Source of the DNA: Setoptus koraiensis
Taxonomy: Eukaryota; Animalia; Arthropoda
Assembly: GCA_048013815.1 (NCBI GenBank)
Contig: CM106586.1
Coordinates: 16,740,001-16,804,000, forward strand
Direction: 5' to 3'
Length of the DNA: 64,000 nucleotides
This document shows positions 1,107-24,297 of this stretch, piece after piece (the first letter of the stretch is position 1; each line of letters begins with the position of its first letter). The notes below the pieces were generated by a model. The model saw only the letters and a program-made list of their open reading frames with translations, did no database searches and had not been told where the DNA came from. The translations under genes and the position numbers were made by a program.

Positions 1107-4100
1107 TTTGAATGCGAGCACCAAACCGTTAATTATCAAGCGTGCATTACGCATTACGCAATCGATGACATCGATCGGCTCGCCTGCTGGCTGACCGATC
1201 GGCGTTGCGTAATGCATCAAGCCGGCATAATCCAGGTGATAACAGTGTTATCATGACACAGGTGATAGAGGTGACACGAGTGACACGAGTGACAGGGCTG
1301 ACATTGGCGTGATCAGCTTGTCGGCCACACCAATATCAATGAGCCGGACAAGTGAGTGTTACGTAAGGCTGTGCTGAGATTGGCGATGCATCGCGATCTG
1401 GCGTGTCAACTAGCCACAAATTAGCATTGATTTCGGGCCGGGTGCCGATGGTTGGGTGGCCAGTGGCCATTGAGTGACCACTAAACTGACTGCAACAACA
1501 AAACTGACTGAGCTAACTGCAACAACTAAACTGACTCAACTGACCGCTGCACTGTCCAGCTAAATTGAGCTTATCAATTTCGGGCATCTAAATGAACCCT
1601 TGCTCAACAAAACCGCTGATACCTTTAGATAGATACCGGCAGATAGACGGCGTTGCGCAACAGTTAGCAGCCAGTAGCGGGCCACCCAAGCCAGCCAGCC
1701 AACGAACCGTTATCTCATCAATATCCATTGGGCATTTGCGTCAAGTTCATTCGGTTGGCTCGAGTGGCTCAATTGGCTCAATTGGCTCGAGTGGCTCAAT
1801 TGGCTTGTAAAATAACAAAATAGCAAAACATGGCAAGCGAAAATAGCCAGACAGTTACTTCTGGCACAGACAGAGACAGCCAGACGGCGGCCAGTTGGCT
1901 AAACGGCCAGGGCTGGGCCGGCTTTTTTCGTCGTTTAGTTGCTTATGCAACAAACGAGTTGGCGGCCACGCTCGCCAATTCCAATTGGCAGTCCGATCCG
2001 AATTTCGGAATGCGCGTTCGAATTTCGAAATGCGCGTTCGAATTGGCACTATTGGCAGTGTTCGCATTTCGAGCGCATTTCGAGCGTTCGAACAGCCAGT
2101 TCGAAGGCGCATTTCGGGCGTCCGTTCGGATTCTTCGCGCTTCTCTCGCTTACGCTGCGCAAGTTACGCAAGCGCACGTCGGGTTGCGCGCTCGCCACGA
2201 CCGACAGCAACAACTAGCGACTTTTATAGTGAAAGTTTTATTTCTCATTTCGATGGTCAACTCCGGCCAACGATGTCGCACCTAATGCCGTCGTTGGTCG
2301 GCGCCGCTCGCAAACAACCGCCATCGACACTTCATCATATGAGCACTTGTTGCTGCTGTCGATGTCGTTGTTGTTGTTGTTGCCGTTGTTGTTGTCGTTG
2401 TTGTTGTTGTTGCTGGCTACGTAGTACGTACTTGCGTTGGCCGGGCGAGCCCGTTTGTAGTCTGGCCGGCTATTTCGGTTAAATATTCAACAATATTTAC
2501 CTGTGCGCAATGTCAATATTCTCGGTCTGGCTGACGGGCTGGCGGGCCGACGTTGAGGCTGGCCGAGCAAACTTGAATGCAAAGCGAGCGAGCGCTCAGG
2601 TGAGTGTAATGAAGTTTAAATTAGACGCACCGACTGGCTGGGCTATTATTAAGTCGGCCGACTCACACAAGTCAACGACGCTTGTTACGCAACCGCCATT
2701 ATGCCAGCATTATCCAACATTATCTAACATGAGTGTGGCAGTATAAACACATTGGCATTTATAGACAAGCGCATTGGCTGCTTTGTTGAACAACTTTTGC
2801 GTCTGTTGTTGTTGTTGTTGTTGTCGTGTCCAAATCAAATCGCACACACGAGAGAGCCAATTTTTGTCCCGATAGTCGCTGGCTTAATTATATTACGTTA
2901 CGTAATACTGTATTGTGTAGACGAGCACACGACGCAACGACACACGAGCGACCATTTCGTTTGTTTGTCGTTTATTTGTTAGTTGTTATTTGTTAGTTGT
3001 TATTTGTTAGTGATACGGACGTAGCACCGTTGCAAAATTGTGTCAATTGTCAAGTGTCAGCGGACGTGCATTTCAGCCTTGCGACACTCCAACCAGGTAG
3101 GGCGCGTCAACGTTGCACTGCGAGCGAGCTCGCAGTCAAAAATCAGTCGAGAGCCAGTCGATAATCGAAGAAAAAGAGCCGAAAAGAGCCGAAAACGAGC
3201 CGAAAACGAGCCGAAAACGAGCCGAAAACGAGAAGTTCCAGCGACGAGCCTCAAGACTCGCGGATGCGAGACGAAAACGAGCCGCATTTGTGTTTGTGTT
3301 TACATTTGTTGAGACCAGCTAAAAATCACAGATAACAGAGAAATACCATACCAGTGTCGCATAGCTATTTTTGTGTCATTCAGCCAATTCATCAGTGCAC
3401 TAGCAGCAACCAATTCAGCAGCATCGCGCCCGTCAGCCAACAATAATGCTGAACTTCAGATAATCGGATAATTTGCATAAACATACAAATATCGCACATG
3501 CACACAACAACAGCGACAACAACAACAGCGACAACAGCAACAGCGATTGCGCAACTTGTCATTTTGTGCCTCACGCAGACCATGTGACACGCTGATGCGA
3601 GACAGGTAGTAAATCATTGCAGTTGCAGCGCCAGCATCAGTGTGGCCGTGGCTGGCAAAATAGCTTTAATAGCAATATAAATTATATAATATGAGTGTAA
3701 AGTTTGAAATATGTAGCAGATGTAGCAGTTGGCCAGTGAGCAGGCAGCGCAAGTCGCCATCAATCACTCGATATTTCACTATCGTATCACTTTGTTTGTT
3801 TTTTCACAAACTGGCGCCTCGTCGGTGCACCTCAGGTGCAGCCAATTAGCGACCAGTTTGTGAAAAGTGCGCCAATTTGTGAGTCGTGAATGAGTCTTGA
3901 GTTGGTCGCATTGAGCGAGTCTCTCAGTTGGCGAGTCTCTCAGTTAGCGAGTCTCTTAATTAGTAAGTCTCTTAATTAGTGAGTCTGCCAATTAGTGAGT
4001 CACACAATCTAGGGCCAGTGACACACCGTAGTGACTGATTGCCGAGTGCAATATGAGTGCCGCCTGTTTGCTGCAAGCGCCAATCGCACGCGATTAATGG

Positions 4101-4635
4101 TCAATTTGAAATGTTACAAACTTTGAAATTCAAACAGTTTTTAAAATTCAAAGACAGTTTAAATGGGCCCGCGATTGTGAATGAGTGCTTGTGAGTGAGT
4201 GCAATATTGCCAGCAGGCAATATTGACAACAACTTAGACTAACAACTTGTAAAACTTAAGCTCTGAGCTCGTTATGCGTCTCAACTCAACCACTTTTCGT
4301 TGCCGGCCGAAGCTGCAACGAAAAGTGATCTGAATGCAAATCTCGCTGCTCGTCACTGCAACTCGGCGCACTATATCATCGCGTCTTCAAATCGCCTCAT
4401 AAATACTAATTAATTAACGTTGACACTTATTAACGTTGTCACTTATTTTCATTTCACCGCAACCCTGTTTGCTTCATCGTTCACCCATCCAATTGCATCC
4501 CAACGACCACCAATTGTGACCGGCCGAATACGACCCACCAATTGTGACACAAAATAAATCAACAATAAAACTGCGCCAAACAAACGCAACAACCGGCCAC
4601 ACCGACAACGCGACATTGCAAATTGCCCACAACAG

Positions 4636-7189: not shown

Positions 7190-7568
7190 ATGCTCAATGG
7201 AAGCCAGCATCTGCACAGCGGCCAACAACAACCGATTTACAACACACTCAAGCCTCATTCTAATTCTAATTATCCGGCGACAGGTGAGCCTCACAACAGC
7301 GCCAACAAGTGCCAGAAAGCAGCCAGCGGCAACAAACAACGAGCGCCCATAGACGACAACAAACAGAACACTGACAACGATGCTGTATTGGTTGATGATG
7401 ATGATCATGATGATGATCATTTCCAACAACGACAAACTGCAAATGGTTTCAATGCTCCATATAAAATATATACTTCACACAATGACCTGGATGACAGTGA
7501 ACGAACTGTTTCGTTTGACCTGGCCACTAATCAACAAGCAGCTGCTAATCACGTCAAGGTTGCAACAG
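7190..7568 (+). CDS. Myo15: Probable myosin XV-like linker exon (MLNGSQH...HVKVAT), with an alternative donor after 7283
   Basis: TGCAG| acceptor in phase 0. Two CAG|GTGAG donors (introns starting 7284 and 7569) are both phase 1, matching the next exon. Low complexity, no recognisable domain. Confidence 0.55.
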
Positions 7569-8680
7569 GTGAGTCTCTTGTGCGCACATTTGTGCAGATA
7601 TTTCAAATATCTGCACAAATATCATATCTGTGCAGATATTTGTGCAGATATTTATCGAGACGCCGCTCGTGCGCATCCAGATAAATGGACACTCGCGTTT
7701 GCCAGATATTTATCAAGATGGAAATATCCCCGTCGCCCATAACATATCCACGCAATGTATGATTGCGTAATGCGTGAGTGGCGCCATAATTGTTGGCAGT
7801 ATCGACGACATGAACTGAAATCGGACTTAATGATCAGCTGACTTGTGTCAGTAATTGTGTCGGTAATTGTGTCGGTAATTGTGTCGGTAATTGTATCAGC
7901 GGTAATTGTTTGCTCGGTGTCCGTGGCGACCGGTCCACAGTTAAGGCACGATGATTGATCTGTTCAAATAATTGAGATAAGTGCCGCTCGCAATCAAAAT
8001 CGGCTCGCTGCATCACAAGCTGCACGTGAACAACAACAGGCTGCAAACAACGGCCATTACGCAACCAGTGACCTCGCCCATTGATAATTCTTTCCGATTA
8101 TTCCCATTTATCGGCTCACTTTCCACCCGATTATCACTTTTCAGCTGATCATTGGGCCGACTTTTGGGCCGATTGTTGGGCCGCCGACATTTTTCAGCCG
8201 ACCATTTAGCCGACCTCTCAGCCGATCATTCAGCCGACCTCTCAGCCGATCGTTCAGCCGACCTCTCAGCTGATCATTGGGCCGCTTCAGCGCGTTCCAT
8301 CAGCACCGTTACCGTTGAAAATTCATTTCGCGTTGCGTGTGAGTGCGTGTGAGTGCGTGTGTGTGCGTGTTGCCAGCGGATAAACGGATAAATGGCCACA
8401 CAATGATTGGCCTATCATTACATAATCATTTGATAATGGCACTCAAGGCGACGCAGTTTGTCACGCTTGTTTGCTACCACTAGCCCGATTCAGCTTCACG
8501 TTAGATTCACCTTGGGATCATTGTTGAGATCACTGTTGAGATCACTGTTGAGATCATTGTTGAGATCATTGCTGCGATCGCTATTGCGACCACTGTTGAG
8601 ACCGTTGCGTAACCTGTTTTATTCAATTTTTTTTTTCATTTTATTCTCTGCTGCCCACACGATGCTATATACGATTCTAG

Positions 8681-8854
8681 ATGGCGTTATAAGCGGCCAA
8701 GAATCGCCACCATTTTTGGCTACACCACCACCAAAGAAACAACAACATTACAACCAGCAACAACAACACCAACAACAACACAGTAGCAACCACTCGTTGC
8801 AGCAGACAAATCTCAGCAGCAAATCGGACACAACGACCAACCAGCAGCAACAGC

Positions 8855-8885
<31 letters not shown>

Positions 8886-9129
8886 GGCAACAAGTGAAAA
8901 GAAAAAGAAGAAACGAAAAACAACCACAACAGGTGGCAGCACAGGCAGCACTATGGCCAGACAGTTGGCATCCTCATCTAATCGTCACCTACATAACTCA
9001 CAATTTGTTGATGATTCGACTATTACGTCATCCACTGTTAGCTACCACAAGCAGCAGCAGCAGCAACAACAACAGCAACAACAGCGTCTGTTTGATAGCG
9101 ACGCCTCGGCTTGGGTGGAGAGCAAGACG
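8681..9129 (+). CDS. Myo15: Probable myosin XV-like linker exon, Gln/Thr/Ser-rich (DGVISGQESPP...WVESKT)
   Basis: TTCTAG| acceptor after a T-rich tract, phase 1. ACG|GTAAGT donor, phase 0. Open frame throughout; polyQ here mixes CAG and CAA. Confidence 0.6.
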
Positions 9130-12100
9130 GTAAGTGAGGCACAATTGCATAACTAAACTGACTGGTTAGTTGTCGATGACATAAACTCGACGACATAAAC
9201 TCGGCGACATGAACAAGTGAAATTGGCACACTGATTTGCCTATCAATGTGGCTCGCATGCGACTCGACATTGTCGACAAAAACAAGCGCAGCAAAAAAGA
9301 ACTCTCCGGGCTGGAGTTGTTTTGCGAACGGGCTTGTTCGAGTTCTTAATCGATGAGACGCGAACGCCAGCGAACGCCAGCGAACGCAAGCGAAGCCTCT
9401 TTTTGCGCCGGCCAAGCGGCTCGCCCGATTTAAATTGTCAGCGCAAGTTGTCGGCGCCGATCGGGCCGAATCGCATGGAATCGCATGGAATCGCATGGAA
9501 TCGCATGGAATCGCATGGAATGGCTGCGAGTCGCTTCGAATTGCATCGCATGCAACCGGCGAACGGGCGATCGAGTTCGCGCTGACTGACTCCTCCAATT
9601 GAGCGCTGCGAAAATTGCCGGCGCTCGCTCGGTGGTGTTTTATGCCGACTGTGTGTGTGCTTGATATATTGGCGAAATGCGGCCAATTTCAATTGGCCGC
9701 ATCGCTGAGAACAAAGCGCCACCATATGATTAAGTCGCTGCACCTTATGACGCAACCCAACGTAACATACGTAATGCGATGTCGGCCATTGTTTGTGTGA
9801 CATAAATTACGTCATTGAATGGCTCTGGATGCTGCTCGTAGACGCACACTGCGCAATGCGCATCGAGCTCACCTTTGCGAACATCGGGCTCACCTTTGCG
9901 AACATCGGGCTCACCTTTGCGAACCCGCTCACTGGCGCTCGCAGTGCGCCTGACTGATCGCTGACGATCTCTGCCAGTTCGGACATCGATATGTCGCTCG
10001 GGTATCGATGTCGCTCGGATATCGATATGTCGCTCGGATATTTGAATCGCGCTCACGGAAATATCAAACTGCAAATTGTGTACGTGTGCACCGATCCATT
10101 ACAGATCCATTACAGATTTCATATCTGAGATTTGTTGCTGTGAGCGTGGGCACAAACGAGCGAGCGGCTTGCATGTTGTCGCTGTTGCGATCGCCATTGC
10201 GTCACTTGTGACCCCATAAAAACGAATGCAATGTCAGGCGTTGTATCAAACAAAATTCAACGGACAACTGTCAATTGGCGAGCCATAACTTGTGAGCTCA
10301 ATTGCAATTATTAATTATTGCAATCAGCTGGCAAGCCAGTTTGATACGTTTGAATACGTGCATACGCTTGATTTATGCCATGCAAATGCATAAATCAAGC
10401 GTCCACAATTTGACAGATGAAGCGACTCGCAACTTGCGAGCCAGTTGGTCAATTGGGCGCCGTTCGGGCGCGATTCCAGCGCGATCGAGTCGCGCAATTT
10501 GAGCGCAATCTGACTGTCAGATTCTGACAATTGTGAGCGCCAATTAATTATTGTAATTTCATTAGCGCAATTATCGCCGACAGGCGGACAAACTCTGTGA
10601 CTCACAGACTGTGAGCGCTCACAATCGCCGCTCGTCTCAATCGCCGAGACTCACAATTGTCAATGGCAGCGCCAGCGTCCGTCGTGCCAGCGTCCGTCGT
10701 GCCAGCGCCCGTGATTTATAATCACAGGTAATGACAATGATAGTGACATAATAGCGATGTGATAACGATAATGATATCAGAAATAAAAAACACAATGAGT
10801 GCACACGAGGCCATATCGCACGAGGGGCGCAAGTGCAATTATTATCGTTATTAATCAATTATTATAAACAGCGTCATGAGCGTCGCCTGTCATGACATGA
10901 CATAAACCCAACGAAAGTGTCGGCAATAAAACTGGCGACAGAATGAATGCGATTTGTGTCAATTTGTGTCAATTTGTGGCGGTCACGACTTGCGACTTTG
11001 TTGGCGAATTTGGCACAGATTGATTGACGGGCACGGACAAACTTGTTGCCGATTGTCGACACACACACACACACACACGGCGAGAGGCACAGAATAGGCT
11101 GCTCGCCCTCTTCGTTGCATCACCTGTAATTGGCCAGCGAAATGGTCAGTGGTCGGTCAAGCTCGGCAGCGGCCATTTTCGGTGGCCGCAAGGGCGCACA
11201 AGCGCTCGCATTGGAGCCGCAAGTTCAAGCGGCCAAGTTCGAGCACATATATACTGTGCATGTTGCGTAATGCGCATGCAGTTTGCGACTTTGTCAGCTG
11301 ACCGTCAGCTGACTGTCAGCTGACTGTCAGCTGACTGTCAACCGACTGTCAACCGAGCGCCAGCTGACCGTCTCATTGCCAATGACTCATTGCCACTGAG
11401 TCATTGTGAGGCAGCGCGCCAATGAGACGCTGGGTGCACGCCGTTGCTGGCCGCATATGTCATCTGTCATCTGTCATGTATCATCTGTCATGTATCAGTT
11501 GTCGTTTGTCATTTGTCAGTTGTCGCGTCTGTCATGTGGCGATGCCAGTGCAAACAAGCGCAACAAGTGTTTCAATTGGGCAACCCATTCAACACGAACA
11601 ACAACAACAACAACAACAACAGCAACAACAACAAATGGGCAACAAGTGTCACGCAATCGCAGTGGCAGCGATGGGTCACCAGTGATCACAATTTCATCAT
11701 TGTTGTCATATCAGAGATATCGATCGCAGATTGGCGAGATATTGATTTTTTACTTTGCTTCTGTTGGGTCGCATGTGCGGCCGGCCACTGACAGCCAACT
11801 AACTGTCAGCCAACTACAGCTAAACAGCTGACTAGCGAGCCAAGTGGCGAGCCAACGGAGAGTCAGTGGCGAGCCAATGGAGAGTCAGTGGCGAGCCAGC
11901 GGCGAGCCAACGCAGAGCTCACAAGCTCAACAGGTGGAGTGGGCAGCCGACAGGTAGAGCGTAGCTGCTGCTGGCGGAGAGAACAGGTGAGCGAGCCGTG
12001 TGCGGTTGGGGGCGTCGAGTGGGGCAAAATCGAAGCCAATTGAATAGCGACTTTGCAATAAAAAGACAAACGAAAGCAAACGCATTGTTGTTGTCGTTGT

Positions 12101-12404
12101 TGGTGTCGTTGGTGTCGTTGTCGTTGGTGTCGTTGTTGTCGAGCCACCAGACGACAACAGCAGCGTAACTCACCAGTCGCAAGACGATTGTTGTCAACTG
12201 CAACACATACGGCACAACGCAACGAAACACAACAGTACACAGCAAGCGTGTGTCGTGTGTAGGAAATAACGACAACTTGTTATTGTTGTTGCTCTATATA
12301 TTATGTAATTGTCGCCATTATGGTGGCAGTCGAGTTTGCGAGGGTTTTAGTAAAGCTTGCGAGCTGCACAAGCTCGGCCAAATCAGCTTGGCCAGCTCTC
12401 TGGG

Positions 12405-12515
12405 CAGCGATCTGACAAGCGACAGCGATCCGACGAGCGACAGCGATCCGACGAGCGACAGCGATCCGACGAGCGACAGCGATCCGACAAGCGACAGCGA
12501 TCTGACAAGCGACAG
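12405..12515 (+). repeat. 18-bp tandem repeat (AGCGACAGCGATCCGACG-like), ~6 copies
   Basis: Directly visible. Confidence 0.9.
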
Positions 12516-13492
12516 AGCGAGAGTGGAAAGTGAAAGAATCTGCCCCGTTCGTCGCTCGCCAGCTCACATGTGAAGCCACACACACACATTATATAACATT
12601 ATATAACATTATATAACATTATATAACATTATATAACAACACATATGACATAATACACATGATATATATACGATAGATATATGCAATTGGGCGAATACAA
12701 TATATAAAGATATAAAGATTAATATAGATTGCGAGCGGGTTTAGATGAGATTAGCGGCATTGTTGGCGTCGCGCTGATGTGAGCGCACGATAATGCCCGA
12801 TGTAACCAACTCTCCATTCTCACAAACAAACACCGATACTAATGACTAATTAATTAGCGCACAGTTCAAACTTCTTGATTGGTTTCTGGCTCGGCTGTCG
12901 CTCGGCCGTTGCTCGGCTATTGCTTGGCTGCTGTTAGTTGGCGGTGGTTGGCGGCGGTTGCCAGCAGTCGCTATTGCGCTAACTACGGTTATCGGGTATC
13001 ATAATGGCTCGCAGGGCATTAGACAAACAAACTGCTCGCTGGCTAGACCCGAGCTCGCCCACTTATTATTGATTAACGTTTGTGTGTCACTCTGACAACT
13101 GTGTGTGTGTGTTACGTAACAGTGTGTCCCATTAGCTGGCCGGTCTGACCAGTTAATTAAACTATTGACAGATATTCGGGCCGTATCAGCTGTTGTTTGT
13201 GTTGCACTTTTGAGTCGTTGCTTGTGTTTGTTTTTTGTGGCTGGCGATGGCCGGCGATGCCAATCGCTGCCGATAGCCGATAGCCTGACACTGTCGGCCG
13301 ATAGGTGTGGTGCGCATGATACGGTTTCCCATAGTGCACAATCAACGCAACACAAACAAACAATTGCAATTAGAGCGCCAGTGGCATCGCATCAATGGCC
13401 ACTTGTCACACCACAAGCTCGCAAACTCGTTGAGACGCTCATACGAGCCTAAACAAGCCACGCTATCGGCACACTAAATAGACAAACATAAA

Positions 13493-13536
13493 ACTATAAC
13501 AAAACTAAATCATCTCTCTCTTTCTCTCTTCTCTTC
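13493..13536 (+). promoter_or_regulatory. Candidate distant branch point plus polypyrimidine tract (alternatively a GAGA/TC-rich promoter element)
   Basis: ACTATAAC (13493-13500) and CTAAAT (13505-13510) are followed at once by CATCTCTCTCTTTCTCTCTTCTCTTC (13511-13536), right at the 5' edge of the AG-free zone. Confidence 0.45.
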
Positions 13537-14079
13537 AATGTGACGCAACCAAACTACAACTACTCGCCTCTGAATGAACTCACCTCTGAATGAACTCACC
13601 TGCGGACAACCGTTGCATAACAAACTCACAACAACGCAACGCAAACAAACATATCGTGCGCCATAAAACACACGATATGTATATCGCGATATGGTGATTG
13701 CGTAACAACCGAACAACACACACAAATCAACACAAATCAATATCAATCGACAAATCGCCTCAACAAATCACGCCACCCGAATGAACCCCAATGAACCGAC
13801 CAACGCGCTCGTTGGCGTGACAACACCAACACGCTGCCCCATGTGACCGTTACGTAACTGGCACACAACTACAAATACCGTAATAATATCAACCAAAATA
13901 ACTCGACCCGTCGCCATATCGACCCATCGCTATATCAACGCCGCCGCATCATGTTGCCGGTGCGCCAATTACGCAACTTGGCATTTGTTTATCTGCAATT
14001 TGTTTATTGACAACGGCAAACAAATTCAATTGGCGTTCAATCCGTGCGTCGGTTGTCACGCTAACAACGATGCTCGCCG

Positions 14080-16861
14080 ATGGTCGCAACAATGAAAAAA
14101 ATCTTGCGCTCCATCAAATGGCTTGGCAATCGCACTAAACGGCGCAACAATCACAAACAACAACAATCCGCAAATGATAAAAATAAACATAACAAACAAA
14201 CAATCAACAACAATCGGCCCAACATTGCAAAAAACAACCGCTCGCCCATTGAAATAAACACAACAACGCACAATGTGACAACCAACAACAACAACAACAT
14301 TGACAATTCGGATGATGCAACCATGGCAACCATGACATCGAAACCGATTGTGGCCGCCAACGGGCGCTTGCGTCACTCAATAAAATCATCACGCTCCTCT
14401 AACGGCGACGACTCGGACCCGTTCGAATGGATATCGCTCATCTCGTTCGACTGTCAATGCACCTGTCCTGTGCAACCCTTCACAACTAACGGTACGCGAA
14501 CAACAAACAACACGACAACAACAAACAATGCTGCTGTTCGTGCACAACAATGTCACAATGGCGCAACTGAACCCGCTGCAATTGAATTGTGCAATATCGA
14601 CGACAATGACGCAACATTACTGTCAACGGCAACAACGACAACAACAACAACAACAACGACAACAACGACAACAACGACAACGCCGTTTGTTGCGAACGTC
14701 GTCAACGATAAAAAACTGCATCAAACCGAACTGGCTATTGTGTCGTCCATGTCGTCTGGGTCGTCGCAAACGGCTGCGCTTAAAAAACAACCACTGACTC
14801 AAATTAACAATGCTAATTGTCATCAATGCGGCTCCTGGTCGCAACCACTGAAATCGCTGCTGGGCCAAACAAAACAATATCGCCAACAACAACGTCAACT
14901 GCAACAACAACGCCAACTACAACTGCAACAACTGCAACAACTGCACCGGCTCGACTGCTTCGACTCGCTGGACAATCGCGCAACAAATAACAATTATAAT
15001 GTCGATTACATAATGGAAACGATCACCATCGACGATTGTGTCAATTATCCGCTCATTGAATTCAACAACTTCGAATCGCCGCCGCCGCTGCCGCCGCCGC
15101 TGGCGACATCGACGGTTGCATCGACGATCACATCGGCATCAACATCGACTCATGTCGACTGTCATAATCACACGCCAATTGCCAACCAAACTGGATGCAC
15201 AAACAAAAATGCAAATCAACACTGGCCGTCGAACCTGTCGCTGATGCAATCAATCGGGGCCAAACATCGCTCATGTGAACACAACAACATCATCGACACC
15301 GACAACCGCAACAACCGCAACAACCGCAACAACCGCAACAACAACATTTGCGACAACCACGACAACACCGTTGGCGACAACCGCGTTTCGGCCAACGACA
15401 ACGACATGTCCGCTCTAATTGCCACTTGCGCTCCGCAACAACACCAACAACACCAACAACCACCACAACCACCACCACAACAACAACAACTCGCCGTTGT
15501 GCACAACCAATCGGCGCCGGCCATCGTCCGAAATACGAACGCCAACGTCGATGTCGCTCATGGCGAAACTGCGACCACCGTGAACGGCGTGCTTGGCGTG
15601 GACCTAAAAACCGCTAACTGTCGCTCATCTGTCACTGGCCAAAAACAACAACAACAACAACAACGACAACGACAAATCGATGTCACCTTGTTCGAACAAC
15701 TGTCGCTGGCCAACAATGTGTCGCCGTTGTGTTGCGCAAAAAATCTCATTGCCGACGCTAATAATACCGACGCTAATAATACCGACGACGGTGACGCAAT
15801 TGGCGATGTTGCGCAACTGACAACCACCGCAAATGCAAATCACGGCATCGTGTCGCTGTTGAACCAACTGAATTGCGACGCACTCGGCAACGACAACCAC
15901 AACGCCGATCGCCCAATGATTCATTTCTCGGTGGAATCGACACCGTTGACGTCGCCACTGTCGCCACTCATTCAATTGGCCGCCACCAACCACCGCTGTC
16001 ACCAATTGGCGCACATTAAACAAATTCACAACAACCGCTCCAACAACAACAACAACCAATACCTGGCCATGTCCACCAAATTGGACCTGCTGTGTCGGAC
16101 ACCCACGCCAACGTACCTGTGCGATGCCGGCGCGGACAACCTGTTGCCGCTCATGCCGACAACACCGGCCACGACATGCTCCAAAATGGCAACAACGACC
16201 ACATCGACGACCAACGGCCAATCGGTTGACACGACGACGACATCATCGTCGTCACGACCGTTGCACGCTGATTGCTCGATGCTTCTTTTTTCGATCACTA
16301 ACGATCGCGGCTACCCGAAAACCAACGCAACAAACTCGAACGCAACTTGCAATATTGGCGACACGATCGGCGCCATTGTTCCGACAACAACAACAACGAC
16401 AACAACAACAACGACAACAACAACGCCCATCGCTGATCCTTACTCGAACTTGTCCGCTCATGCACAACAAAACAACAACGACGACAACGACGACAACGAC
16501 GACAACGACGACGACAACAACAACGACAACAACGACGACACTTCGACCCCAACTGCGAACTCTGGCTGCGCTTCGCGAACGAACTCGCATCGGGATTTGG
16601 ATCGGAATGCCGCTGGCTCGAACTCCCAATCTCACCGCTCCGAATGCGACTCGGCCGCTTGTGACGCAACCGGCGAACGACGCGACGCAACCGCAAACTG
16701 TGGCGCACTCAATGAAACTTGCACTTGGAACCACTCAACTCTGAAACTGTCGACCGCAATCATCGATTGTACATTGTTCCACGGCAACGCCGCCGACGAC
16801 AACACCGCCGAACCGGCCGATCCGACAACACAAACAACGACGCAACAACAACATCAACATC

Positions 16862-16932
<71 letters not shown>

Positions 16933-17853
16933 CCTGTGCCGTCTGCGCGAAAACTGTCTCTGACTAATGTCGCATCTCCAATCGCATCGACATCGCGCCA
17001 TCATTCGTCGTCTGGCTGCCATTCTGACGCAACAACAACAACAACTGATTTAAATCATCGTCAATTGTCAACTATGCTGACCAACTGCCCACCGCCGCCA
17101 ATGGCGCCACATGCTGCCGCTGCCGTTGTGGCCATGCAATCGTCGTTGCAAAACGCCAATCAACTGAACGCGCTGCTAACTGCCAATAATTGCGCAACAA
17201 CCACAACAACGACAAATCAAATTTGCGACCACGTAAAAACAAACGAACAAACGCTACTGATGGGTGGCGCTGCAATCACCGCTCAACAACAACTGCAAAT
17301 CAATCATCTGTTCGTCGACGACGACAACCGAAACTCGTCAACGTCATCGACAACAACTGTCAACAACCACACAAATTTGCAACAACAACAATGTGCCGAC
17401 AACAACACCGACAACAACAACACCAACATCAACAACACCGACATCAACAACACCGACGTCAACAACACCGACGCTGTTCACCTGGCGGGCATATCTACGC
17501 AAATGCAAACGCACACGAACACGAACGGCACAACGAAACCAAATGACCAAACGACAATTGAAAATGACCCCGATGAAAACGCCGCTCAAATGTGGCCGTG
17601 CATTCAATTGAAAAATAACAACAATTTCAATAATGATGACGGTGAAAATGCAAATCGCTCCAACGATGATCGTGTCCTAAATGAAATAAATGCAACGTCG
17701 CCGACAACAACGCCGCTCGCCGACAACAATGACGCCAATGACAACAACAACAACAACGACAAATACCACGACGTTTGCCGCGCTCGTCCGGCCAATGCCA
17801 ACAACGAACGCCCTGCCTCCGACAACAACACCAACAACAACAACAACAACACC

Positions 17854-17933
<80 letters not shown>

Positions 17934-19182
17934 CGACGACGCCGACGACGGCTTGGCGAACCTGTCGGATACACCTGTTGCAATTGTGCAAAATGGCGCA
18001 ACGGTTGCCGCCGAACCGGCTCTGAACGGTGCCGCCGAAACAACAATGTTGAACAATGTTGAAAACGCCGCCGGCTGCGTCGCTTGGCAACTTGTTGCCG
18101 CCGCCGCCGCTGCGCCGAAAAACGATGGAAAAACTGCCGGCCGCTCGAACGAACCTTCGAATGGCGAACATTCTTTATTCGAAATGAACGCTGCCCATGC
18201 GAACGCTCGCAACGCCAACAAAAACGACGGCTCCACTTTAAATGCAAATGAATCGGCCGAACAACGACAACAACAACGACAAACCGAAAACGCGCGCCAA
18301 CCGGGAAATCAAATCAATTGTCCGTTGTCACCTGTTGCCGGCGCTCAATTGTGCCCCGCAACAACCGCAACCACAACAACCGCAACAACTACAACAACCG
18401 CAACAACCATACCGACCGCCGCGCTCGACCACTCGCGCTCGGCCAATCAATTGTGCAACAACGCCGATTTCGAAAAAACGGACGCGATTGACGGACAACA
18501 ACAACAACAACAACACGCTGACAACGACAATGTGTGGCGCCCTTTCGGTAACGCGGATGCCGGCTCAACTGACGTGATGGTGCCATCAAATGCAAACATC
18601 AATGTTAATTGCGACATCGATGTTGTGAACGGCGATCAACTCGATCGGTCGCACTGTCGATTGGCCGCTCATGACGCAACCGTCGATCGATCTGATTCGA
18701 ACGTGACGCAACAACATCAACTCGTCGACAACTTTGGCGACCAACGGCCCAACCACAACAACCACAACAACAACCACGACAACGACAACAACAACCACAA
18801 CAACCACGACAACCAAAACAACCACAACGACAACAACAACAACGACAACCGCGACTCGTCGATGGACGCGACCCGACGCGACGAAACAAACAAAACGACG
18901 TCGTCCGTGCGCTCAAACCAATGGTCGTCGTCGTCGTCGTCGCTGAAACGGCGCCCATCGCTCCCGTTTGCCTTCTTCAAACAAAACCAATTTACCTGTC
19001 GCGACACGGGCCCAACAACGAAAATGGCCAACACCGACGACATTGATTTTGTTGAAAATCGATCGCCTGCGCCAACCGGCAAACCGGACACCGCCGACCA
19101 ACAACTGACGCCGACGATGGAAAAATTGACCGCCAACGATCGCGTCACAACCAATGACCACCACAAACAACAACCACAACAG
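14080..19182 (+). CDS. AG-free 1,701-codon ORF; putative alternative first exon or 5' extension encoding an N/Q/T-rich disordered region, in frame with the MyTH4-FERM exons
   Basis: In-frame TAA at 14062-14064, then ATG at 14080 with no AG between them. No stop for 5.1 kb although TAA and TGA are common in the other frames. Continues in frame into 19183-19878. Confidence 0.7.
16861..16932 (+). repeat. Pure (CAA)24 polyglutamine tract
   Basis: 24 consecutive CAA with no CAG, consistent with AG exclusion. Confidence 0.95.
17854..17934 (+). repeat. (AAC)27 polyasparagine tract
   Basis: Uninterrupted AAC run within the long ORF. Confidence 0.9.
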
Positions 19183-19878
19183 GACCTGTCACTGGAGGAC
19201 CTGCGCCAGTGCTGCAAATCGGAGCCCATTTATGCCACTGGGGCCGCCAGTCAGCTGAGTGGCGCCTCGGCGGCCACTTGTGGTCAGCGCAATCAGCAGG
19301 ACGATTGCGCAATCGGCAACAGGCAGTGCGCGGACCCCAAGCAAGCGGATGCCAACAGCAACAACAACAACAACAACAACGGCAACGGCAAGCAAGCGAC
19401 CGGCGACGCCAACAACAACTCAGACGGAAAATATTCTCTGCTTCAGTATGCGCTGTACAATTTTCGCGAGGCCATAGAAAAGTATTCGCTTGAGTCGCAA
19501 TCGAAAGTGAAAGAGAACTCGCTGCGCGGCTCGCTAAAACTGATCGAAACACTTCGAAACAGCAACAAGCAACAGGGCAAACTAATGAGCCCCACAGGCA
19601 CGCTCCAGCAGCAAGATTGTGGCGCCGAGCGCAAGAAATCGAGCGCCGCCTCGGCGCTCGGTCTGGCCACGCTAACGACCAGCGCCAAAAAGAACAAGCA
19701 CAACAAGCACAACAACAACAGCAACAACAACAACAGCGGCGCTGCTGATGCAAAACTGCACGACGGCCAAACCGCTTCCGGCGATTCGGCCAGAAATTCC
19801 GGCGTCGCCGGCAAGCAGCACGGCGCCTCCTTCGACTGGACCTGGAAGGAGCTGGCCGAGCTGGTCAAGTTTACACAG
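19183..19878 (+). CDS. Myo15: Myosin XV-like exon leading into the second MyTH4 domain
   Basis: CCACAACAG| acceptor, phase 0. Encodes DGKYSLLQYALYNF...DWTWKELAELVKFTQ, matching the conserved KYSLLQFA...WxELVKF signature. CAG|GTGAGT donor. Confidence 0.85.
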
Positions 19879-19934
19879 GTGAGTGCGGGCCGCTTTCGCG
19901 AGAGCCGCTCCTAGCGCGACCGGTCGCCGATAAT

Positions 19935-20032: not shown

Positions 20033-21893
20033 CGGTCCCGTTAGTCTGCGCATCGCTCGCATCGGGCGAGTTGCGTCACACTGCCGATTTGCTCATTTCT
20101 GCGTGCGAGTGACAAACGCAGCCGGCGAGAGCTGAGGCGCGACAAGCGCGCGAAAGCTGCGTCGCGATGCGCGGGCCGAGCCCGCGAGCCGAAAATTCCG
20201 GCAAATGCCCGGCCGGCCAGTGCGACTTCCGGTTTGCCGCTCGCCGTTCGCCGCTCGCCGCTTGGCAGCCCGGGCGGCAGGCGCCGGGATGCGGACGGGC
20301 TGCGGCGGGATGCGGCCGAGCAGCAAAGGCCCGGCGCCGCGCAGATCGAGCCCGGCCGATAGATGGTATCTGTCTCACGCATTGTGGGCCGCCCGTCCGA
20401 TTCAGCTGATACGAGTCGCATCAGGCGACATGCTCGGTGGCGCAGCGGCGAGACGAGCGGTCACTCGTTTAGTGGCAACAACATTAAGATTGTGCGATAA
20501 TGAAGTGAGCGAGAGTTGCAATTTCAGCTTCTTTTCGCCGGCCGTTTCGCCGGCCGTTTCGCCGGCCGTTTCGCCGGCCGTTTCGCTGGCTGCGCTTCGC
20601 CGGAATAAATAGAAACGGCGAGATTTCGGCGACGGCCGCCGGTGTGAGAGCCGCCGACCGGCGGGCTGGCCGCTCCGTCTGGGCGGCGTGTCGCCCAGCG
20701 AGAGCGCGCCCAAACAAGCGCGCCAGATTAATGGTGTTCGCGTAACGGTAGCAGTTTACTTTTTAATTTTCAACTTTCGACTCTCAACTCTCGGCTCTCA
20801 ACTCTCGGCTCTCAACTTCTGACTCTCGGCTCTCAGCTCGCAACTTTCGGCTCTCGGCTCGCAACTTTCGTCTCGCAACTTCTGGCTCGCAACTTCTGGC
20901 TCGCAACTCTGAATCTCGGCTCTCGAATCGCAACTTTCGGCCAGAGCGAAGTTGGTCGCCAATTAGCGGATCGTCGCAGCCAGCGAGCGCCACAAGTGCA
21001 ACTTGTTTCGCTTGTCGTCGTCGGCGCTGCCGTTGTTGTTGCGCATGGCCGATGGTCGCAAACATCCGCCTTTCAATTAACTCTCGCTCGCCGTCTCGCC
21101 GGCCGACTTCATTTGGCACACACAATGACGCCAACTTTGCGCAAATGTTGCGACAAAAACACGGCAACCGACGGCTCGCTGGCCCTCGGACGGCATCTCG
21201 GGCTGCCTATGTCGGCTGCCTAGCTTGCGCAATATTCGTTACCTGTGTACACTGCGCACACGGCGTAACGGTGTATTTGCCAGATATTATCTGGCCGATT
21301 GGCGACACACAAACGCGGACATTATGATGATCATTACGATGCTAATGATAAGCCCATGTATTGACAAAAAGAATCCGCTCGAACAGGCCGCTGCTCATCA
21401 TTAGACAAAGTGCTCATGCGGCTCGCTCGCTAATTTAATTTGTTGCTCGTTATGTCCGCTCGTTATGTCCGCTCAGTTCAGTCGCAAACAACCAACTTTT
21501 GGCGCCGTAACAGACCGTTTACAACGTTAAACATGCGCTGTTAGTCGGCCGCATTGACAACATTTATTACATAATTGTCCGCCAGCAGCACCCAACAATA
21601 CCTGGCGAAACAATGCTCGCAATTGCACGTTTATCCGTTACAATCACATGCTGCAGTCACCAAGTGGCCGACACTCTATAGATCAATAGCCACCGTCCAC
21701 TAACTTTAACCTTAAATCTCATCCCATGTCGCCCTCGCAACCCGACCAAAATGACCGACGCGACCAAAATGACCGACGCGACCAAAATGACCGACGCGAC
21801 CAAAATGATCGACGCGATCTGGCCCGCGCACTGGCCCGACAACTCGAATGCTGCCTGTGCCAATCAACCCAACCGCCGTGCCACTACCAACAG

Positions 21894-22498: not shown

Positions 22499-22667
22499 GT
22501 AAGCCATCGCCCCATACCAACAATAAATGATGATAATATCCGTCCCCAACGACAGATCAGATTGTTATCAGTTTCGCCACACACAAGTCAGTGTGATCTC
22601 AAGTACAATTGACTAACCGATTCATTTTAATCGCTATTCATCATTTAATTATCGCTTCGAAAAACAG

Positions 22668-23068
22668 CGACAGTTGCCTGCGCGGCTGGAGACTCTTCTC
22701 GATCATCGCCGCCTATTTCGATTGCTCCGACGACTTCCGGCCGTATTTGTTGAAATATCTGGAGACGGCCGCTTTCGACAGGCGACGGGCCTTCTACTCG
22801 TTGGCGTCGTTGTGTTTGCAAAATTTACGAAAGACATTCAAGTACAAGGGAAGAAAGAACGTGCCCTCCATAGAGGAGATAGCCGCTATTAGCGCGGGCA
22901 GAAACAGTAAACGCCAAATATATCGCTTGCCCGGCGGCACCGAACGTGTGATAAATACAAAGTCTACCACTGTGGTCCAAGACATCATTCAAGAGATTTG
23001 CTCCATGCTACAGGTGACCAACGCGATCGAAATGGACGAGTTCTCGCTCTATTGCATCGTGGAGGGAG
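22668..23068 (+). CDS. Myo15: Myosin XV-like MyTH4 end and FERM start
   Basis: DSCLRGWRLFSIIAAYF...GRKNVPSIEEI...RQIYRLPGGTERVINT...EFSLYCIVEG. AAAACAG| and |GTGAGT, phases 2/1. Confidence 0.93.
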
Positions 23069-23116
23069 GTGAGTGTCTTGCCAAGTTGCTGCTCTCTGCT
23101 GGGGCGTTTTCTATGA

Positions 23117-23300
23117 TTTCCGACAATTTCTGAAAATTTCTGAAAATTTCGGACAATTTCGGACAATTTCTGACAATTTCGGACAATTCTGATTTCTGGA
23201 AATTTTGATTTCTGACAATTAAAATTTCTGACATTCACAATTTCTGACATTCACAACTTCTGACAACCACAATTTCTGACAACCACAATTTCTGACAATT
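23117..23300 (+). repeat. Degenerate ~10-bp array (TTTCTGACAA-like) filling most of the last myosin intron
   Basis: Directly visible; contains no AG. Confidence 0.85.
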
Positions 23301-23329
23301 ACTATTCCTAATGATCGTTTGCTTGGCAG

Positions 23330-24297
23330 ACCTGTACACGATGCCGCTGAACAGGGACGAATACATTCTGGACATCACTACTGAATTGCTCAAAAACGGC
23401 CAGATATTCTATCTCATCTTCTGTCGGTCCGTTTGGTTTTATCCGTTACATTTGGACAGTCACCTGTATATAGAGGTCGTGTTCAATCAGATTGCGCCCG
23501 ACTATTTGGAGGGCCTGTTGTTGGTGATGCCAAACGAACAATTAAGCCAACGAAATGTTGTTGATATTGCCCGAGTGGCGGCACTGTTGCACCGTGCCGC
23601 CGGAATGGAGGAAATGCCCAACAAGGAAGAAGTGAAATACCTGTTACCCAAGCCAATATTGTCCTTTCACAAGCCGTCGTCTTCGTCGTCGTCGGCCACA
23701 TTATCCAGCAACAACAACAACAACAACAACAATAGTAATGGCCAACAGTCGGCCTCGCTCACAACAACCAGCAGTCACAGTAGCTCGGTGAGCCAACTTC
23801 CGGTTTCCGGTTATGTGAAGCCCCAAAAATGGATTGATATGGTGCAAAAGAATTGGAGCGACATGACGGCATTGGACACTCTTGATGCCAAGGCACAATG
23901 TTTGGATATTTTGCAAAAGTGGCCCCTGTTTGGTTCGTGTTTTTTCGCTATCAAGCTCATCAGGAGTGACACAACACAACATAGCGACCATATATTGGCT
24001 TTAAATAGAATGGGCGTGCACATGTTAGATATGGAATCGCACGAAACGCAACACAGGTACCCCTATAGTGAGGTTATATCAACTAGAAAGGTTCGCTCCG
24101 AGGATGGAACACTTTATCTGGATATGAAGTGTGGCAATTTGATGCACAAGACCATCACGCGCATACAAACAGATCAGGCCCACGAGATATCTCGTCTCAT
24201 AAAACAATACATAGATATTGAACAAAGTCATAGAAACGGATGCCACAAACAAAACGATGCAATGGACACACCAGCCAATATGATGATATCCAAATAA
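23330..24297 (+). CDS. Myo15: Myosin XV-like terminal exon, FERM domain
   Basis: DLYTMPLNRDEYILDITTELLK...FNQIAPDYLEGLLL...WPLFGSCFFA...EVISTRKVRSEDG...QAHEISRLIKQYI. Stop TAA overlaps AATAAA (24293-24298). Confidence 0.95.

What the first reader, a model, noticed from the sequence alone, without database searches (positions are those of the whole stretch)
13482..19182. A 5.7-kb stretch with zero AG dinucleotides that is both intron and a 1,701-codon ORF
Seen: no AG on + from 13482 to 19180. The first AG downstream is the in-phase acceptor of the conserved myosin exon (19181-19182), and AGs reappear in abundance right after it. The ORF obeys the ban: Gln only CAA, Glu only GAA, Lys only AAA, Ser only TCN, Arg only CGN. 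In the parts I checked, K/Q/E are never followed by a G-starting codon (V/A/D/E/G). PolyQ in the 8681 exon mixes CAG and CAA, an internal control. Illustrative odds at an assumed 3% AG per position are about e^-174. Banning AG removes only TAG stops, so the open frame is separate evidence of coding. Established: human distant-branch-point exons have AG exclusion zones, typically about 100-400 nt, and the 3' site is picked by scanning to the first AG. Inference: either (a) the motif and pyrimidine tract at 13493-13536 act as an ultra-distant branch point and the spliceosome scans 5.7 kb, or (b) this is an alternative first exon purged of every cryptic acceptor so the full-length isoform can skip it cleanly (a proximal CTGAC at ~19105 could then serve as branch point). 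Either way a splicing rule appears to have rewritten a whole protein segment. I know of no described case at this scale.
Basis: partly seen in the sequence, partly recalled or inferred. Interest (0 to 1): 0.95.

Follow-up and report, generated by a model that had tools for sequence, protein, structure and literature searches.

The report
Kilobase AG-free intron that also codes
In a gall-mite-type myosin XV gene, 5.7 kb of DNA that is both the end of an intron and a 1,700-codon coding exon contains no AG at all. The same holds in nine related species, which suggests the splicing machinery marks the intron kilobases upstream and joins at the first AG it meets.

Summary
There is no AG from 13482 to 19180, where about 345 are expected. 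The next longest AG gap in the window is 310 nt, and no other dinucleotide is missing.

The organism is not a fly. The gene is myosin XV of an eriophyoid-type mite, and its nearest named relative is Fragariocoptes setiger.

The zone is the 3' half of a 10-kb intron of the long (motor) isoform, which runs from the donor at 9130 to the acceptor at 19181-82. The zone also holds the 5' UTR and a 1,701-codon ORF, in frame with the next exon. That ORF would give a motor-less isoform.

Nine other species of the same clade have AG-free zones of 0.75-3.5 kb at this place. Each ends at the homologous phase-0 acceptor. Nine of the ten zones begin with CTAA[ACT] plus a pyrimidine tract, and the tenth has CTAAC 12 nt upstream of its boundary AG. 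None has that motif near the acceptor. The zones share no alignable DNA.

In an outgroup mite the same intron is about 52 nt long and conventional.

Best reading: branch points far upstream combined with a first-AG rule. No RNA data could be obtained, so branch-point use is inferred, not shown.

This scan has already noted shorter AG-free zones (112-957 nt) elsewhere in this genome. This case is the longest, and the only one among the notes retrieved here that mentions overlap with coding sequence.

The parts
8681..9129 (+). Upstream coding exon of the long (motor) myosin XV isoform. It ends ...WVESKT, and its phase-0 donor GTAAGT starts at 9130.
   Evidence: Sequence. The exon end W(V/I)E(S/T)K(T/V) followed by GTRAGT in phase 0 is conserved in L010, L001, L004, L005 and L007. 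It is joined to the next exon in the F. setiger gene model.
9130..19182 (+). Intron of the long isoform (10,053 nt). The first 4,350 nt have ordinary AG density; the last 5,699 nt are AG-free.
   Evidence: The homologous intron is 1.8-6.5 kb in the relatives and about 52 nt in the outgroup Halotydeus destructor.
13494..13536 (+). Candidate distal branch-point sequences (CTATAAC 13494-13500, CTAAA 13505-13509), followed by a 27-nt pyrimidine tract (13510-13536). All lie directly after the last AG (13480-81).
   Evidence: CTAA[ACT] lies within 40 nt of the 5' end of the zone in 9 of 10 species (background 0.088, binomial P = 2.8e-9). The tenth species has CTAAC 12 nt upstream of its boundary AG.
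13482..19180 (+). AG-free zone (5,699 nt).
14080..19182 (+). 1,701 codons inside the zone, from ATG 14080. This is the predicted unique N-terminal segment of a motor-less myosin XV isoform. It reads straight through the acceptor into the next exon.
   Evidence: Open frame with 0 stops, against 38 and 64 in the other frames. Its C-terminal part resembles the N-terminal regions of the short-isoform ORFs of relatives. Those share conserved motifs among themselves.
19181..19182 (+). First AG after the zone. This is the phase-0 acceptor of the long isoform.
   Evidence: The same site is the acceptor in the F. setiger gene model. Tick long isoforms have the two flanking peptides contiguous.
19183..19878 (+). 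Common exon, starting DLSLEDL... and containing DGKYSLLQYALYNFRE. Its donor GTGAGT starts at 19879. AG density and CAG/GAG/AAG codon use are normal here.
21688..21893 (+). 3' end of the next intron, with the same layout on a small scale: last AG 21688, CTAAC at 21700, a pyrimidine-rich run, about 190 nt without AG, acceptor 21892-93 with no pyrimidine tract next to it.
22609..24294 (+). MyTH4 and FERM exons of the tail, shared by both isoforms.
   Evidence: Pfam: MyTH4 2.5e-20, plus weaker matches to FERM-type families, below Pfam's cut-off except IRS-type PTB. Exon mapping with P0011.

Best explanation
The zone is the spacer between branch point(s) and 3' splice site of one intron of myosin XV, in a mite lineage that appears to choose the 3' splice site as the first AG downstream of a branch point and its pyrimidine tract.

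Pre-mRNA from the upstream (motor) promoter is spliced from the donor at 9130. The most upstream competent branch site lies at about 13.5 kb (CTATAAC/CTAAA plus a 27-nt pyrimidine tract). Exon ligation takes the first AG after it, at 19181-82.

Any AG arising in between would become the acceptor and break or alter the long isoform. All AGs are therefore purged.

The same DNA holds a 1,701-codon ORF that reads through the acceptor. It probably starts a second transcript from an internal promoter and gives a motor-less MyTH4-FERM protein. Its codons and neighbouring amino acids are forced to avoid AG.

Shown here: the ban, its exact boundaries, the ORF, and conservation across 10 species of the clade. 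Also shown: the branch-site signal at the 5' boundary, the poor signal at the acceptor, and the ancestral short intron in an outgroup.

Inferred: that the distal branch site is actually used, that ligation can reach over 0.75-5.7 kb (perhaps by waiting for the first AG to be transcribed), and that the short isoform has its own promoter.
For: (1) The ban is absolute and sharply bounded. There are 0 AG against about 345 expected, with ordinary AG density up to 13480 and from 19181 onward.

(2) Nine further species have AG-free zones at the homologous place. These are F. setiger L010 and eight unnamed loci (L001, L003-L008, L011). The zones are 748-3523 nt, where 33-169 AG are expected, and every one ends at a phase-0 AG. 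Other AG gaps are at most about 185 nt in eight of these loci; L010 has one of 402 nt.

(3) The window and L010 zones share no alignable DNA apart from low-complexity runs. The AG-free state is therefore maintained by selection, not inherited sequence. 2950 of the 17,097 possible substitutions in the zone would create an AG.

(4) Exact CTAA[CT] lies within 40 nt of the 5' end of the zone in 7 of 10 species (P = 2.6e-7), and CTAA[ACT] in 9 of 10 (P = 2.8e-9). A pyrimidine-rich run follows. None of the 10 has the motif within 40 nt upstream of the acceptor, and the local tracts are poor: the window has 0 T in the last 25 nt.

(5) The ban starts 0.6 kb (window) to 1.3 kb (L010) upstream of the ORF. 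It therefore follows the splice signals, not the coding frame.

(6) Donor and acceptor are supported by homology. The donor ...W(V/I)E(S/T)K(T/V)|GTRAGT is conserved in phase 0. The F. setiger gene model joins it to the first AG after the zone. Tick long isoforms have the two peptides contiguous.

(7) AGs that shift the zone boundary or interrupt the zone are all in phase 0. These are the NAGNAG in L001, an AG 102 nt upstream of the usual site in L007, and the GAG codon in L005 and L007. This is expected if each first AG is used as an acceptor.

(8) In the outgroup H. destructor the same phase-0 intron is about 52 nt long, with its branch site 10-17 nt from the AG.

(9) Other introns of the same gene in the window show the layout in miniature. 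Earlier notes of this scan report 112-957-nt AG-free zones elsewhere in this genome (used as leads only).

(10) Established knowledge: AG choice by a search that starts at the branch point, and AG exclusion zones as markers of distant branch points (Gooding et al. 2006, PMC1431707; Taggart et al. 2017, PMC5378181).
Against: There is no RNA evidence. The four public runs that hold the stretch have flat depth across it, as DNA would, and showed no splice junction. No junction, lariat or 5'-end data could be read.

Verified branch-point-to-AG distances in the papers read reach about 350-400 nt. Several kilobases has no experimental precedent.

The zone contains further CTAAY motifs: 11 in the window, the nearest 2.0 kb from the acceptor, plus a CTGAC at -76. 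F. setiger has a good CTAAC plus tract at -90 and another at -483. Most splicing may therefore use nearer branch sites, with the distal one used only occasionally.

The pyrimidine tract could also serve as a promoter element of the short isoform.

L007 carries one AG inside an otherwise AG-free 1.47 kb. A strict first-AG rule predicts that AG would be used.

No conserved long-range pairing that would loop out the spacer was found.
Confidence: 0.7

Rival explanations
1. A proximal, weak branch site (for example CTGAC at about -76 in the window, or CTAAC at -90 in F. setiger) does nearly all the splicing. The upstream branch-site-like elements are only occasional competitors. The AG ban then reflects selection against rare mis-splicing rather than a routine kilobase search.
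For: Candidate proximal sites exist. No kilobase-scale branch-to-AG distance has been shown experimentally.
Against: A complete ban over 0.75-5.7 kb in 10 species needs every AG to be appreciably harmful. The strongest consensus plus tract sits at the 5' boundary, not at the acceptor. In the window the last 25 nt before the acceptor contain no T. Even this reading needs distal sites to be usable over kilobases some of the time.
Confidence: 0.17
2. The ban serves the short-isoform mRNA itself. A very long first exon must contain no acceptor and no consensus donor (GTRAGT contains AG), so that it is never cut internally or joined to the acceptor it reads through.
For: Removing AG removes both acceptors and consensus donors. 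The zone has 180 GT, but GTRAGT cannot occur in it.
Against: Other very long exons of the same gene have normal AG density, for example the exon of more than 5.6 kb upstream in L001. The ban extends well upstream of the ORF and starts exactly at a branch-site/tract signal. This reading does not predict that the zone ends at the long isoform's acceptor in phase 0.
Confidence: 0.08
3. A compositional or mutational quirk of A/C-rich low-complexity sequence, or an assembly artefact, with no function.
For: The zone is A/C-rich and G-poor, with strong skews, and contains polyN/polyQ/polyT runs.
Against: Only AG is missing: GA occurs 302 times, CA 716 and AC 793. Only about 10% of the zone is simple repeat. 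The boundaries are exact and coincide with splice signals. The state is conserved in 10 species with unrelated sequence. Independent runs carry the stretch. In the next exon (19183-19878) the same ORF uses CAG, GAG, AAG and AGY freely.
Confidence: 0.03

Closest known systems
AG exclusion zones with distant branch points in vertebrates: alpha-tropomyosin exon 3, PTB exon 11, GABBR1 exon 23 (Gooding et al. 2006, PMC1431707)
   Same: [quoted passage not shown] No good signal next to the acceptor. The AG-free state is conserved in orthologues even where the sequence does not align.
   Different: Scale: verified cases reach about 175-351 nt. The longest predicted cases in that paper are 590 nt (Fugu PTB) and 1126 nt (PTPRS, not conserved in mouse). 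Here the zones are 748-5699 nt and conserved across a clade. The vertebrate zones are non-coding regulatory intron. This one holds a 280-1701-codon ORF. No branch point has been mapped here.
Yeast-type 3' splice-site choice: the first AG after a strong UACUAAC branch site, with longer spacers bridged by RNA structure (PMC3239191; Irimia and Roy 2008, PMC2483917, on intron-poor eukaryotes; the latter seen only in a search listing, not read)
   Same: An intron-poor lineage, a near-invariant CTAAC-type branch site, and an acceptor defined as the first AG downstream with no pyrimidine tract of its own.
   Different: Yeast spacers are tens of nt, rarely above about 150 (my own knowledge). No conserved bridging structure was found here. 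This is an animal lineage. The state of its splicing factors was not examined.
Motor-less or short isoforms of MyTH4-FERM myosins: headless Myo10, and the short PE isoform of Drosophila Myo15/Myo10A (PMC12237259)
   Same: A tail-only product that shares the C-terminal MyTH4-FERM with the full-length motor and has its own start inside the gene.
   Different: By the protein proxy, the Drosophila, Anopheles and hymenopteran short forms show no AG avoidance. The unique N-terminal segment here has its own conserved motifs within the mite clade and no Pfam match.

Membership tests
Distant-branch-point 3' splice site marked by an AG exclusion zone (criteria of Gooding et al. 2006) | No AG between the candidate branch point and the 3' splice site | tested here: met
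   0 AG in 5699 nt in the window. 0 AG in 748-3523 nt in the nine relatives, except one AG in L007.
Distant-branch-point 3' splice site marked by an AG exclusion zone (criteria of Gooding et al. 2006) | Branch-point consensus with an adjacent pyrimidine tract at the 5' end of the zone | tested here: met
   CTAA[ACT] within 40 nt in 9 of 10 species (P = 2.8e-9). The tenth has CTAAC 12 nt upstream of the boundary AG. The best 20-nt pyrimidine windows there score 14-20 of 20.
Distant-branch-point 3' splice site marked by an AG exclusion zone (criteria of Gooding et al. 2006) | No good branch site or tract in the conventional place next to the acceptor | tested here: inconclusive
   No CTAAY within 40 nt (or 90 nt, in the eight loci tested) of the acceptor, and the tracts there are poor. 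However, the window has CTGAC at -76 and F. setiger has CTAAC plus tract at -90.
Distant-branch-point 3' splice site marked by an AG exclusion zone (criteria of Gooding et al. 2006) | AG-free state conserved in orthologous introns | tested here: met
   10 species in a clade with 100/99 support. The zones are not alignable. The outgroup has a 52-nt conventional intron.
Distant-branch-point 3' splice site marked by an AG exclusion zone (criteria of Gooding et al. 2006) | Branch point mapped on RNA, or shown by mutation to be needed | not testable with these tools
   The only runs that hold the stretch have flat depth, as DNA would. The single read-laying run gave no junction or lariat information.
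Class XV myosin (long isoform) with C-terminal MyTH4-FERM | MyTH4 and FERM domains in the tail. Myosin head, IQ and MYO15 domains upstream in the same gene. | tested here: met
   MyTH4 clearly, with weaker FERM-type matches, in the window. The upstream ORFs of the orthologous loci L001 and L012 carry Myosin_head, IQ and MYO15. The nearest named protein is 'Unconventional myosin-XV' of F. setiger. The motor exons lie outside the window.
Internal-promoter, motor-less isoform | A transcript that starts inside the gene and is translated from the ORF in the zone | not testable with these tools
   Only the conserved open frame and its conserved motifs support it. No 5'-end or expression data are available.

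The most novel reading that the evidence does not exclude
In eriophyoid mites the spliceosome commits at a branch point and can then take an AG that lies kilobases downstream, up to 5.7 kb here. It may do so by holding the lariat intermediate on the nascent transcript until the first AG is transcribed. On this reading 3' splice-site choice in the lineage is anchored on the branch point. Any sequence that lies in the spacer, including a whole protein-coding exon, evolves under an absolute dinucleotide ban.
Probability: 0.5. Interest if true: 0.92.

Novelty: new variant of a known kind. Interest (0 to 1): 0.82.

Why it matters
[quoted passage not shown] A conserved zone of 0.75-5.7 kb would stretch the accepted reach of the second step of splicing by more than tenfold. 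It would also give a natural system for asking how the acceptor is found: linear search, diffusion, or waiting for transcription.

It is also an unusually clean case of a non-coding rule dictating protein sequence. Across 5,210 codons in 10 species, no CAG, GAG, AAG, AGY or AGR codon is used. No codon ending in A is ever followed by one starting with G, against 286 of 1322 in the rest of the same proteins. So certain amino-acid neighbours, such as K, Q or E before G, A, V, D or E, are forbidden.

For annotation it has a practical side. In these mite genomes the acceptor can be predicted as the first AG after a CTAAC-type site, and kilobase AG-free runs flag introns and their branch sites.

Tried and rejected
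**RNA evidence.** The look-up of sequencing runs was busy twice. It then returned four runs of unknown kind. Laying them showed flat contig depth broken at low-complexity runs, as genomic DNA would give, and no splice junction. So there is no test of junction 9129>19183 and no lariat or transcript-start data.

**Fly assumption.** I first read the locus as Drosophila Myo10A and looked up its isoforms. This was rejected when the nearest named protein turned out to be from F. setiger and the tree grouped the window with it.

**Homologue search with the low-complexity ORF.** The first search was swamped by low-complexity words and gave only 8 hits. Those hits were nevertheless the key to the orthologous loci.

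**Long-range RNA pairing that might loop out the spacer.** One 15-nt pair (13803-17 with 19131-45) lies near both ends of the window zone. Duplex energies between the head and tail of the zone are no better than for other windows in any of the 10 loci. There is no support for a conserved bridge. An earlier version of this script timed out.

**Window-wide link between long AG gaps and CTAAY.** Uninformative, because most gaps are not introns.

**Contigs L006 and L008 as possible transcripts.** Both start in (GA)n repeats, so they were not usable as evidence for a transcript start.

**A tree with a mis-framed window sequence.** Discarded and redone.

**Literature.** Searches for AG exclusion zones in Drosophila, AGEZ, distant branch points and eriophyoid intron papers found no description of kilobase or coding AG-free zones.
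Full report
**Observation**

A recount shows the last AG at 13480-81 and the next at 19181-82. The 5,699 nt between them hold no AG. Base composition predicts 345, and the AG rate of the rest of the window predicts 296. The next longest AG gap in the 64 kb is 310 nt, and no other dinucleotide has a gap above 581 nt.

Only AG is missing. GA (302), CA (716), AC (793) and CG (543) are all plentiful. Simple triplet runs make up only 564 nt of the zone.

AGs occur at normal spacing right up to the left edge and resume 15, 27 and 42 nt after the right edge.

Contigs of four public runs from three studies and two coded organisms carry the stretch. Their six substitutions and four indels create no AG.

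**The ORF**

The frame opening at 14065 (ATG at 14080) runs to 19914 without a stop. Inside the zone it has 0 stops in 1,700 codons, against 38 and 64 in the other frames.

It passes the AG at 19181-82 in phase 0 (CAA CAG|GAC) and continues into the exon that begins the second MyTH4 region.

Inside the zone Gln is CAA 143/CAG 0, Glu is GAA 35/GAG 0 and Lys is AAA 43/AAG 0. Ser is never AGY and Arg is never AGR. Directly after the acceptor the same ORF uses CAG 12/CAA 6, GAG 9/GAA 2 and AAG 11/AAA 9, along with AGY and AGR.

**What organism and gene**

I first took the locus for a fly. It is not.

The tail exons are closest to KAG9509056.1, 'Unconventional myosin-XV, partial' of the eriophyoid mite Fragariocoptes setiger. 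A maximum-likelihood tree of the MyTH4-FERM tail puts the window with F. setiger. That pair is sister to 15 unnamed proteins from public read and metagenome assemblies. The whole group has 100/99 support and stands apart from Halotydeus destructor, a spider, ticks and insects.

The unnamed loci are intron-poor: one has an upstream ORF of more than 3,100 residues with myosin head, IQ, MyTH4 and MYO15 domains. That fits what is published for eriophyoid genomes (PMC7738191; bioRxiv 10.64898/2026.08.24.746826).

Earlier notes of this scan independently call this genome a gall-mite genome.

**Gene structure around the zone**

The exon ending at 9129 (...AWVESKT) has a consensus donor GTAAGT in phase 0.

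The same exon end, W(V/I)E(S/T)K(T/V) followed by GTRAGT in phase 0, is present upstream of the zone in F. setiger (L010) and in L001, L004, L005 and L007.

The deposited F. setiger gene model joins that exon (7307-7540) directly to position 14089. That is exactly the base after the first AG that ends its own AG-free zone, giving ...TWVETKT|DSISLDF....

In ticks the two sides are contiguous in the long isoform (WVEAKDHVDNLED).

In the outgroup mite H. destructor the same phase-0 position (WIESKS|DQGMDD) carries an intron of about 52 nt. It has CTAAT and CTGAC 10-17 nt from the AG, and the longest AG gap in 14.8 kb of that locus is 120 nt.

So 9130-19182 is an old intron of the motor-bearing isoform that has grown greatly in this clade. 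The zone is its 3' part.

**Conservation of the ban**

Nine further species have an AG-free zone at the homologous place. Their lengths are 3,523 nt (F. setiger), 1,814, 1,592, 1,473 (with one AG inside), 1,334, 1,332, 1,306, 807 and 748 nt. Composition predicts 33-169 AG in each. Elsewhere AG gaps reach at most about 185 nt in eight of these loci; F. setiger has one of 402 nt.

Every zone ends at an AG in phase 0 just before the conserved acidic motif (Q|DFDEDE, Q|DFYDED, K|EFDEDE, Q|DSISLDF, Q|DLSLEDL).

The window and F. setiger zones have no alignable DNA apart from CAA/AAC runs. In the window, 2,950 of the 17,097 possible single substitutions would create an AG. Shared ancestry of sequence therefore cannot explain the state, and purifying selection against AG is the only reasonable reading.

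Pooled over the ten species there are 5,210 zone codons. They contain CAG 0 of 382 Gln, GAG 0 of 144 Glu, AAG 0 of 204 Lys, AGY 0 of 540 Ser and AGR 0 of 207 Arg. A codon ending in A is followed by one starting with G 0 times in 1,430. In the downstream parts of the same ORFs this happens 286 times in 1,322.

By the protein proxy (no K, Q or E before G, A, V, D or E), 17 unnamed short-isoform proteins show N-terminal runs of 155-557 residues. The named insect short forms do not.

**Where the ban starts**

In seven of ten species an exact CTAA[CT] lies 3-33 nt after the last upstream AG (background 0.059 per 40 nt; binomial P = 2.6e-7). With CTAAA allowed, it is nine of ten (P = 2.8e-9). Each is followed by a pyrimidine-rich run.

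The tenth species (L005) has CTAAC 12 nt upstream of its boundary AG. That is too close for the AG to be used under the known minimum-distance rule (PMC1431707, PMC5378181).

In the window the elements are CTATAAC (13494-13500), CTAAA (13505-13509) and a 27-nt tract (13510-13536) with one 20/20 pyrimidine window.

By contrast, none of the ten has CTAAY within 40 nt upstream of the acceptor. The tracts there are poor: the window has no T in its last 25 nt.

The ban begins 0.6 kb (window) and 1.3 kb (F. setiger) upstream of the ORF. It therefore follows the splice signals, not the reading frame.

**Further hints that the first AG is the one used**

AGs that shift the zone's end or interrupt the zone are all in phase 0:
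- the GAG|CAG pair at the acceptor of L001;
- an AG 102 nt upstream of the usual site in L007;
- the GAG codon of a conserved N-E pair, which is the 5' boundary in L005 and the single internal AG in L007.

These are three or four independent events, each with a one-in-three chance expectation.

**The same layout on a small scale**

In the next intron of this gene the last AG (21688) is followed 10 nt later by CTAAC and a pyrimidine-rich run. About 190 nt without AG then lead to an acceptor that has no tract of its own. Another intron has CTAAC 10 nt after its last AG and 50 nt before the acceptor.

Earlier notes of this scan report AG-free zones of 112-453, 389, 596 and 957 nt before acceptors in other genes of this genome, and acceptors without pyrimidine tracts. 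Those are unchecked notes and I use them only as context. My own check is limited to this gene.

**Mechanism proposed**

In this lineage the 3' splice site appears to be the first AG downstream of a competent branch site and tract.

For this intron the most upstream such site lies at the 5' edge of the zone. Any AG arising downstream of it would be taken as the acceptor and would damage the long isoform, so every AG is removed.

The spacer has been free to grow, partly by expansion of AG-free low-complexity runs. It has come to encode the N-terminal extension of a tail-only protein that reads through the acceptor.

Several further CTAAY motifs lie inside the zones: 11 in the window, the nearest 2.0 kb from the acceptor, and in F. 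setiger at -90 and -483 with good tracts. Several branch sites may therefore feed the same AG. The share of splicing that uses the distal one is unknown, but it must be large enough for selection to see every AG.

How ligation would reach over kilobases is not known. A spliceosome that has done the first step and waits on the nascent RNA for the first AG to be transcribed is one possibility. A conserved RNA bridge was looked for and not found.

**What is not shown**

No RNA data could be obtained. The following all rest on sequence and comparison:
- the junction in this species;
- the branch point(s);
- the start site and existence of the short transcript;
- the existence of the short protein.

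The single AG inside the L007 zone is unexplained. It may be an alternative in-frame acceptor, a recent change, or an error in one contig.

**Comparison with what is known**

The pattern meets the sequence criteria used for distant-branch-point exons in vertebrates: an AG-free zone, a branch consensus plus tract at its 5' end, and conservation of the zone without sequence conservation (PMC1431707).

It differs in three ways. Verified vertebrate cases are 175-351 nt, and the longest predicted are 590 and 1,126 nt, against 748-5,699 nt here. The zone is conserved over a whole clade. It is also protein-coding.

It resembles the branch-site-anchored choice of intron-poor yeasts, but at distances far beyond theirs.

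Motor-less isoforms of MyTH4-FERM myosins are known, including a short Drosophila Myo15 isoform (PMC12237259). Those show no AG avoidance by the proxy.

I found no description of a kilobase-scale or coding AG exclusion zone in the searchable literature.

**Verdict**

This is a new and extreme variant of a known kind of splice-site architecture. It is of high interest both for the mechanism of 3' splice-site selection and as a clean example of a splicing rule constraining a protein sequence.

Noticed in passing
L007:3304 (with zone 2689-4161) and L005:4733: The same GAG codon of a conserved Asn-Glu pair holds the single AG inside the otherwise AG-free L007 zone. In L005 it is the 5' boundary of the zone. 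Upstream of it the L005 ORF has normal AG density. This looks like stages of a branch site moving downstream, or an extra in-frame acceptor.
   Followed up: partly
L001:11233-11241: The acceptor is a NAGNAG (GAG|CAG|GAC), so two in-frame acceptors 3 nt apart are possible in that species.
   Followed up: no
window 13803-13817 and 19131-19145: A 15-nt inverted repeat, 93% complementary, with one arm about 270 nt after the pyrimidine tract and the other 36 nt before the acceptor. No equivalent head-to-tail pairing stands out in the other nine loci.
   Followed up: partly
window 13670-13695: A cluster of CGATA/TATCG motifs around a palindrome TATCGCGATA, about 150 nt downstream of the pyrimidine tract and about 390 nt upstream of the ATG. 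It could belong to the promoter of the short isoform. This was not tested.
   Followed up: no
window 13567-13601: A direct duplication of a unit of about 16 nt (ctgaatgaactcacct) just after the pyrimidine tract.
   Followed up: no
window 23084-23329: This intron of about 260 nt is almost wholly AG-free. It is built of repeated aatttctgaca-like units, each carrying a CTGAC branch-site-like motif. A CTAAT lies about 20 nt before the acceptor.
   Followed up: partly
window 579/580 and 8680/8681: The exon ending at 579 (CAG|GTAAGT) is in phase 0, but the acceptor at 8680/8681 needs one base from the previous exon. At least one further coding exon must therefore lie between them. A weak match to the F. 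setiger protein lies at 7316-7510.
   Followed up: partly
L006:1-30 and L008:1-27: Both public contigs start in (GA)n microsatellites.
   Followed up: yes
L010 (GCA_019968535.1, JAIFTH010000708.1) 11860-14088: The F. setiger record annotates only the long-isoform splice. The 743-codon in-frame ORF inside the intron, the likely short-isoform start, is not part of the deposited model.
   Followed up: partly
alignment A1 (P0001-P0008), N-terminal 400 columns: The short-isoform N-terminal segment has conserved motifs (MERKxKSL, NExTxKLAQSIKSIL, FDWPxSFIQLLDSL, SSLAIDDRDFEL, SLWLMNF, HDRNIINLMKFL, KTLPLRFNQIT). The homologous segment of the window ORF gave no Pfam match; the aligned proteins were not scanned. 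The function is unknown.
   Followed up: no
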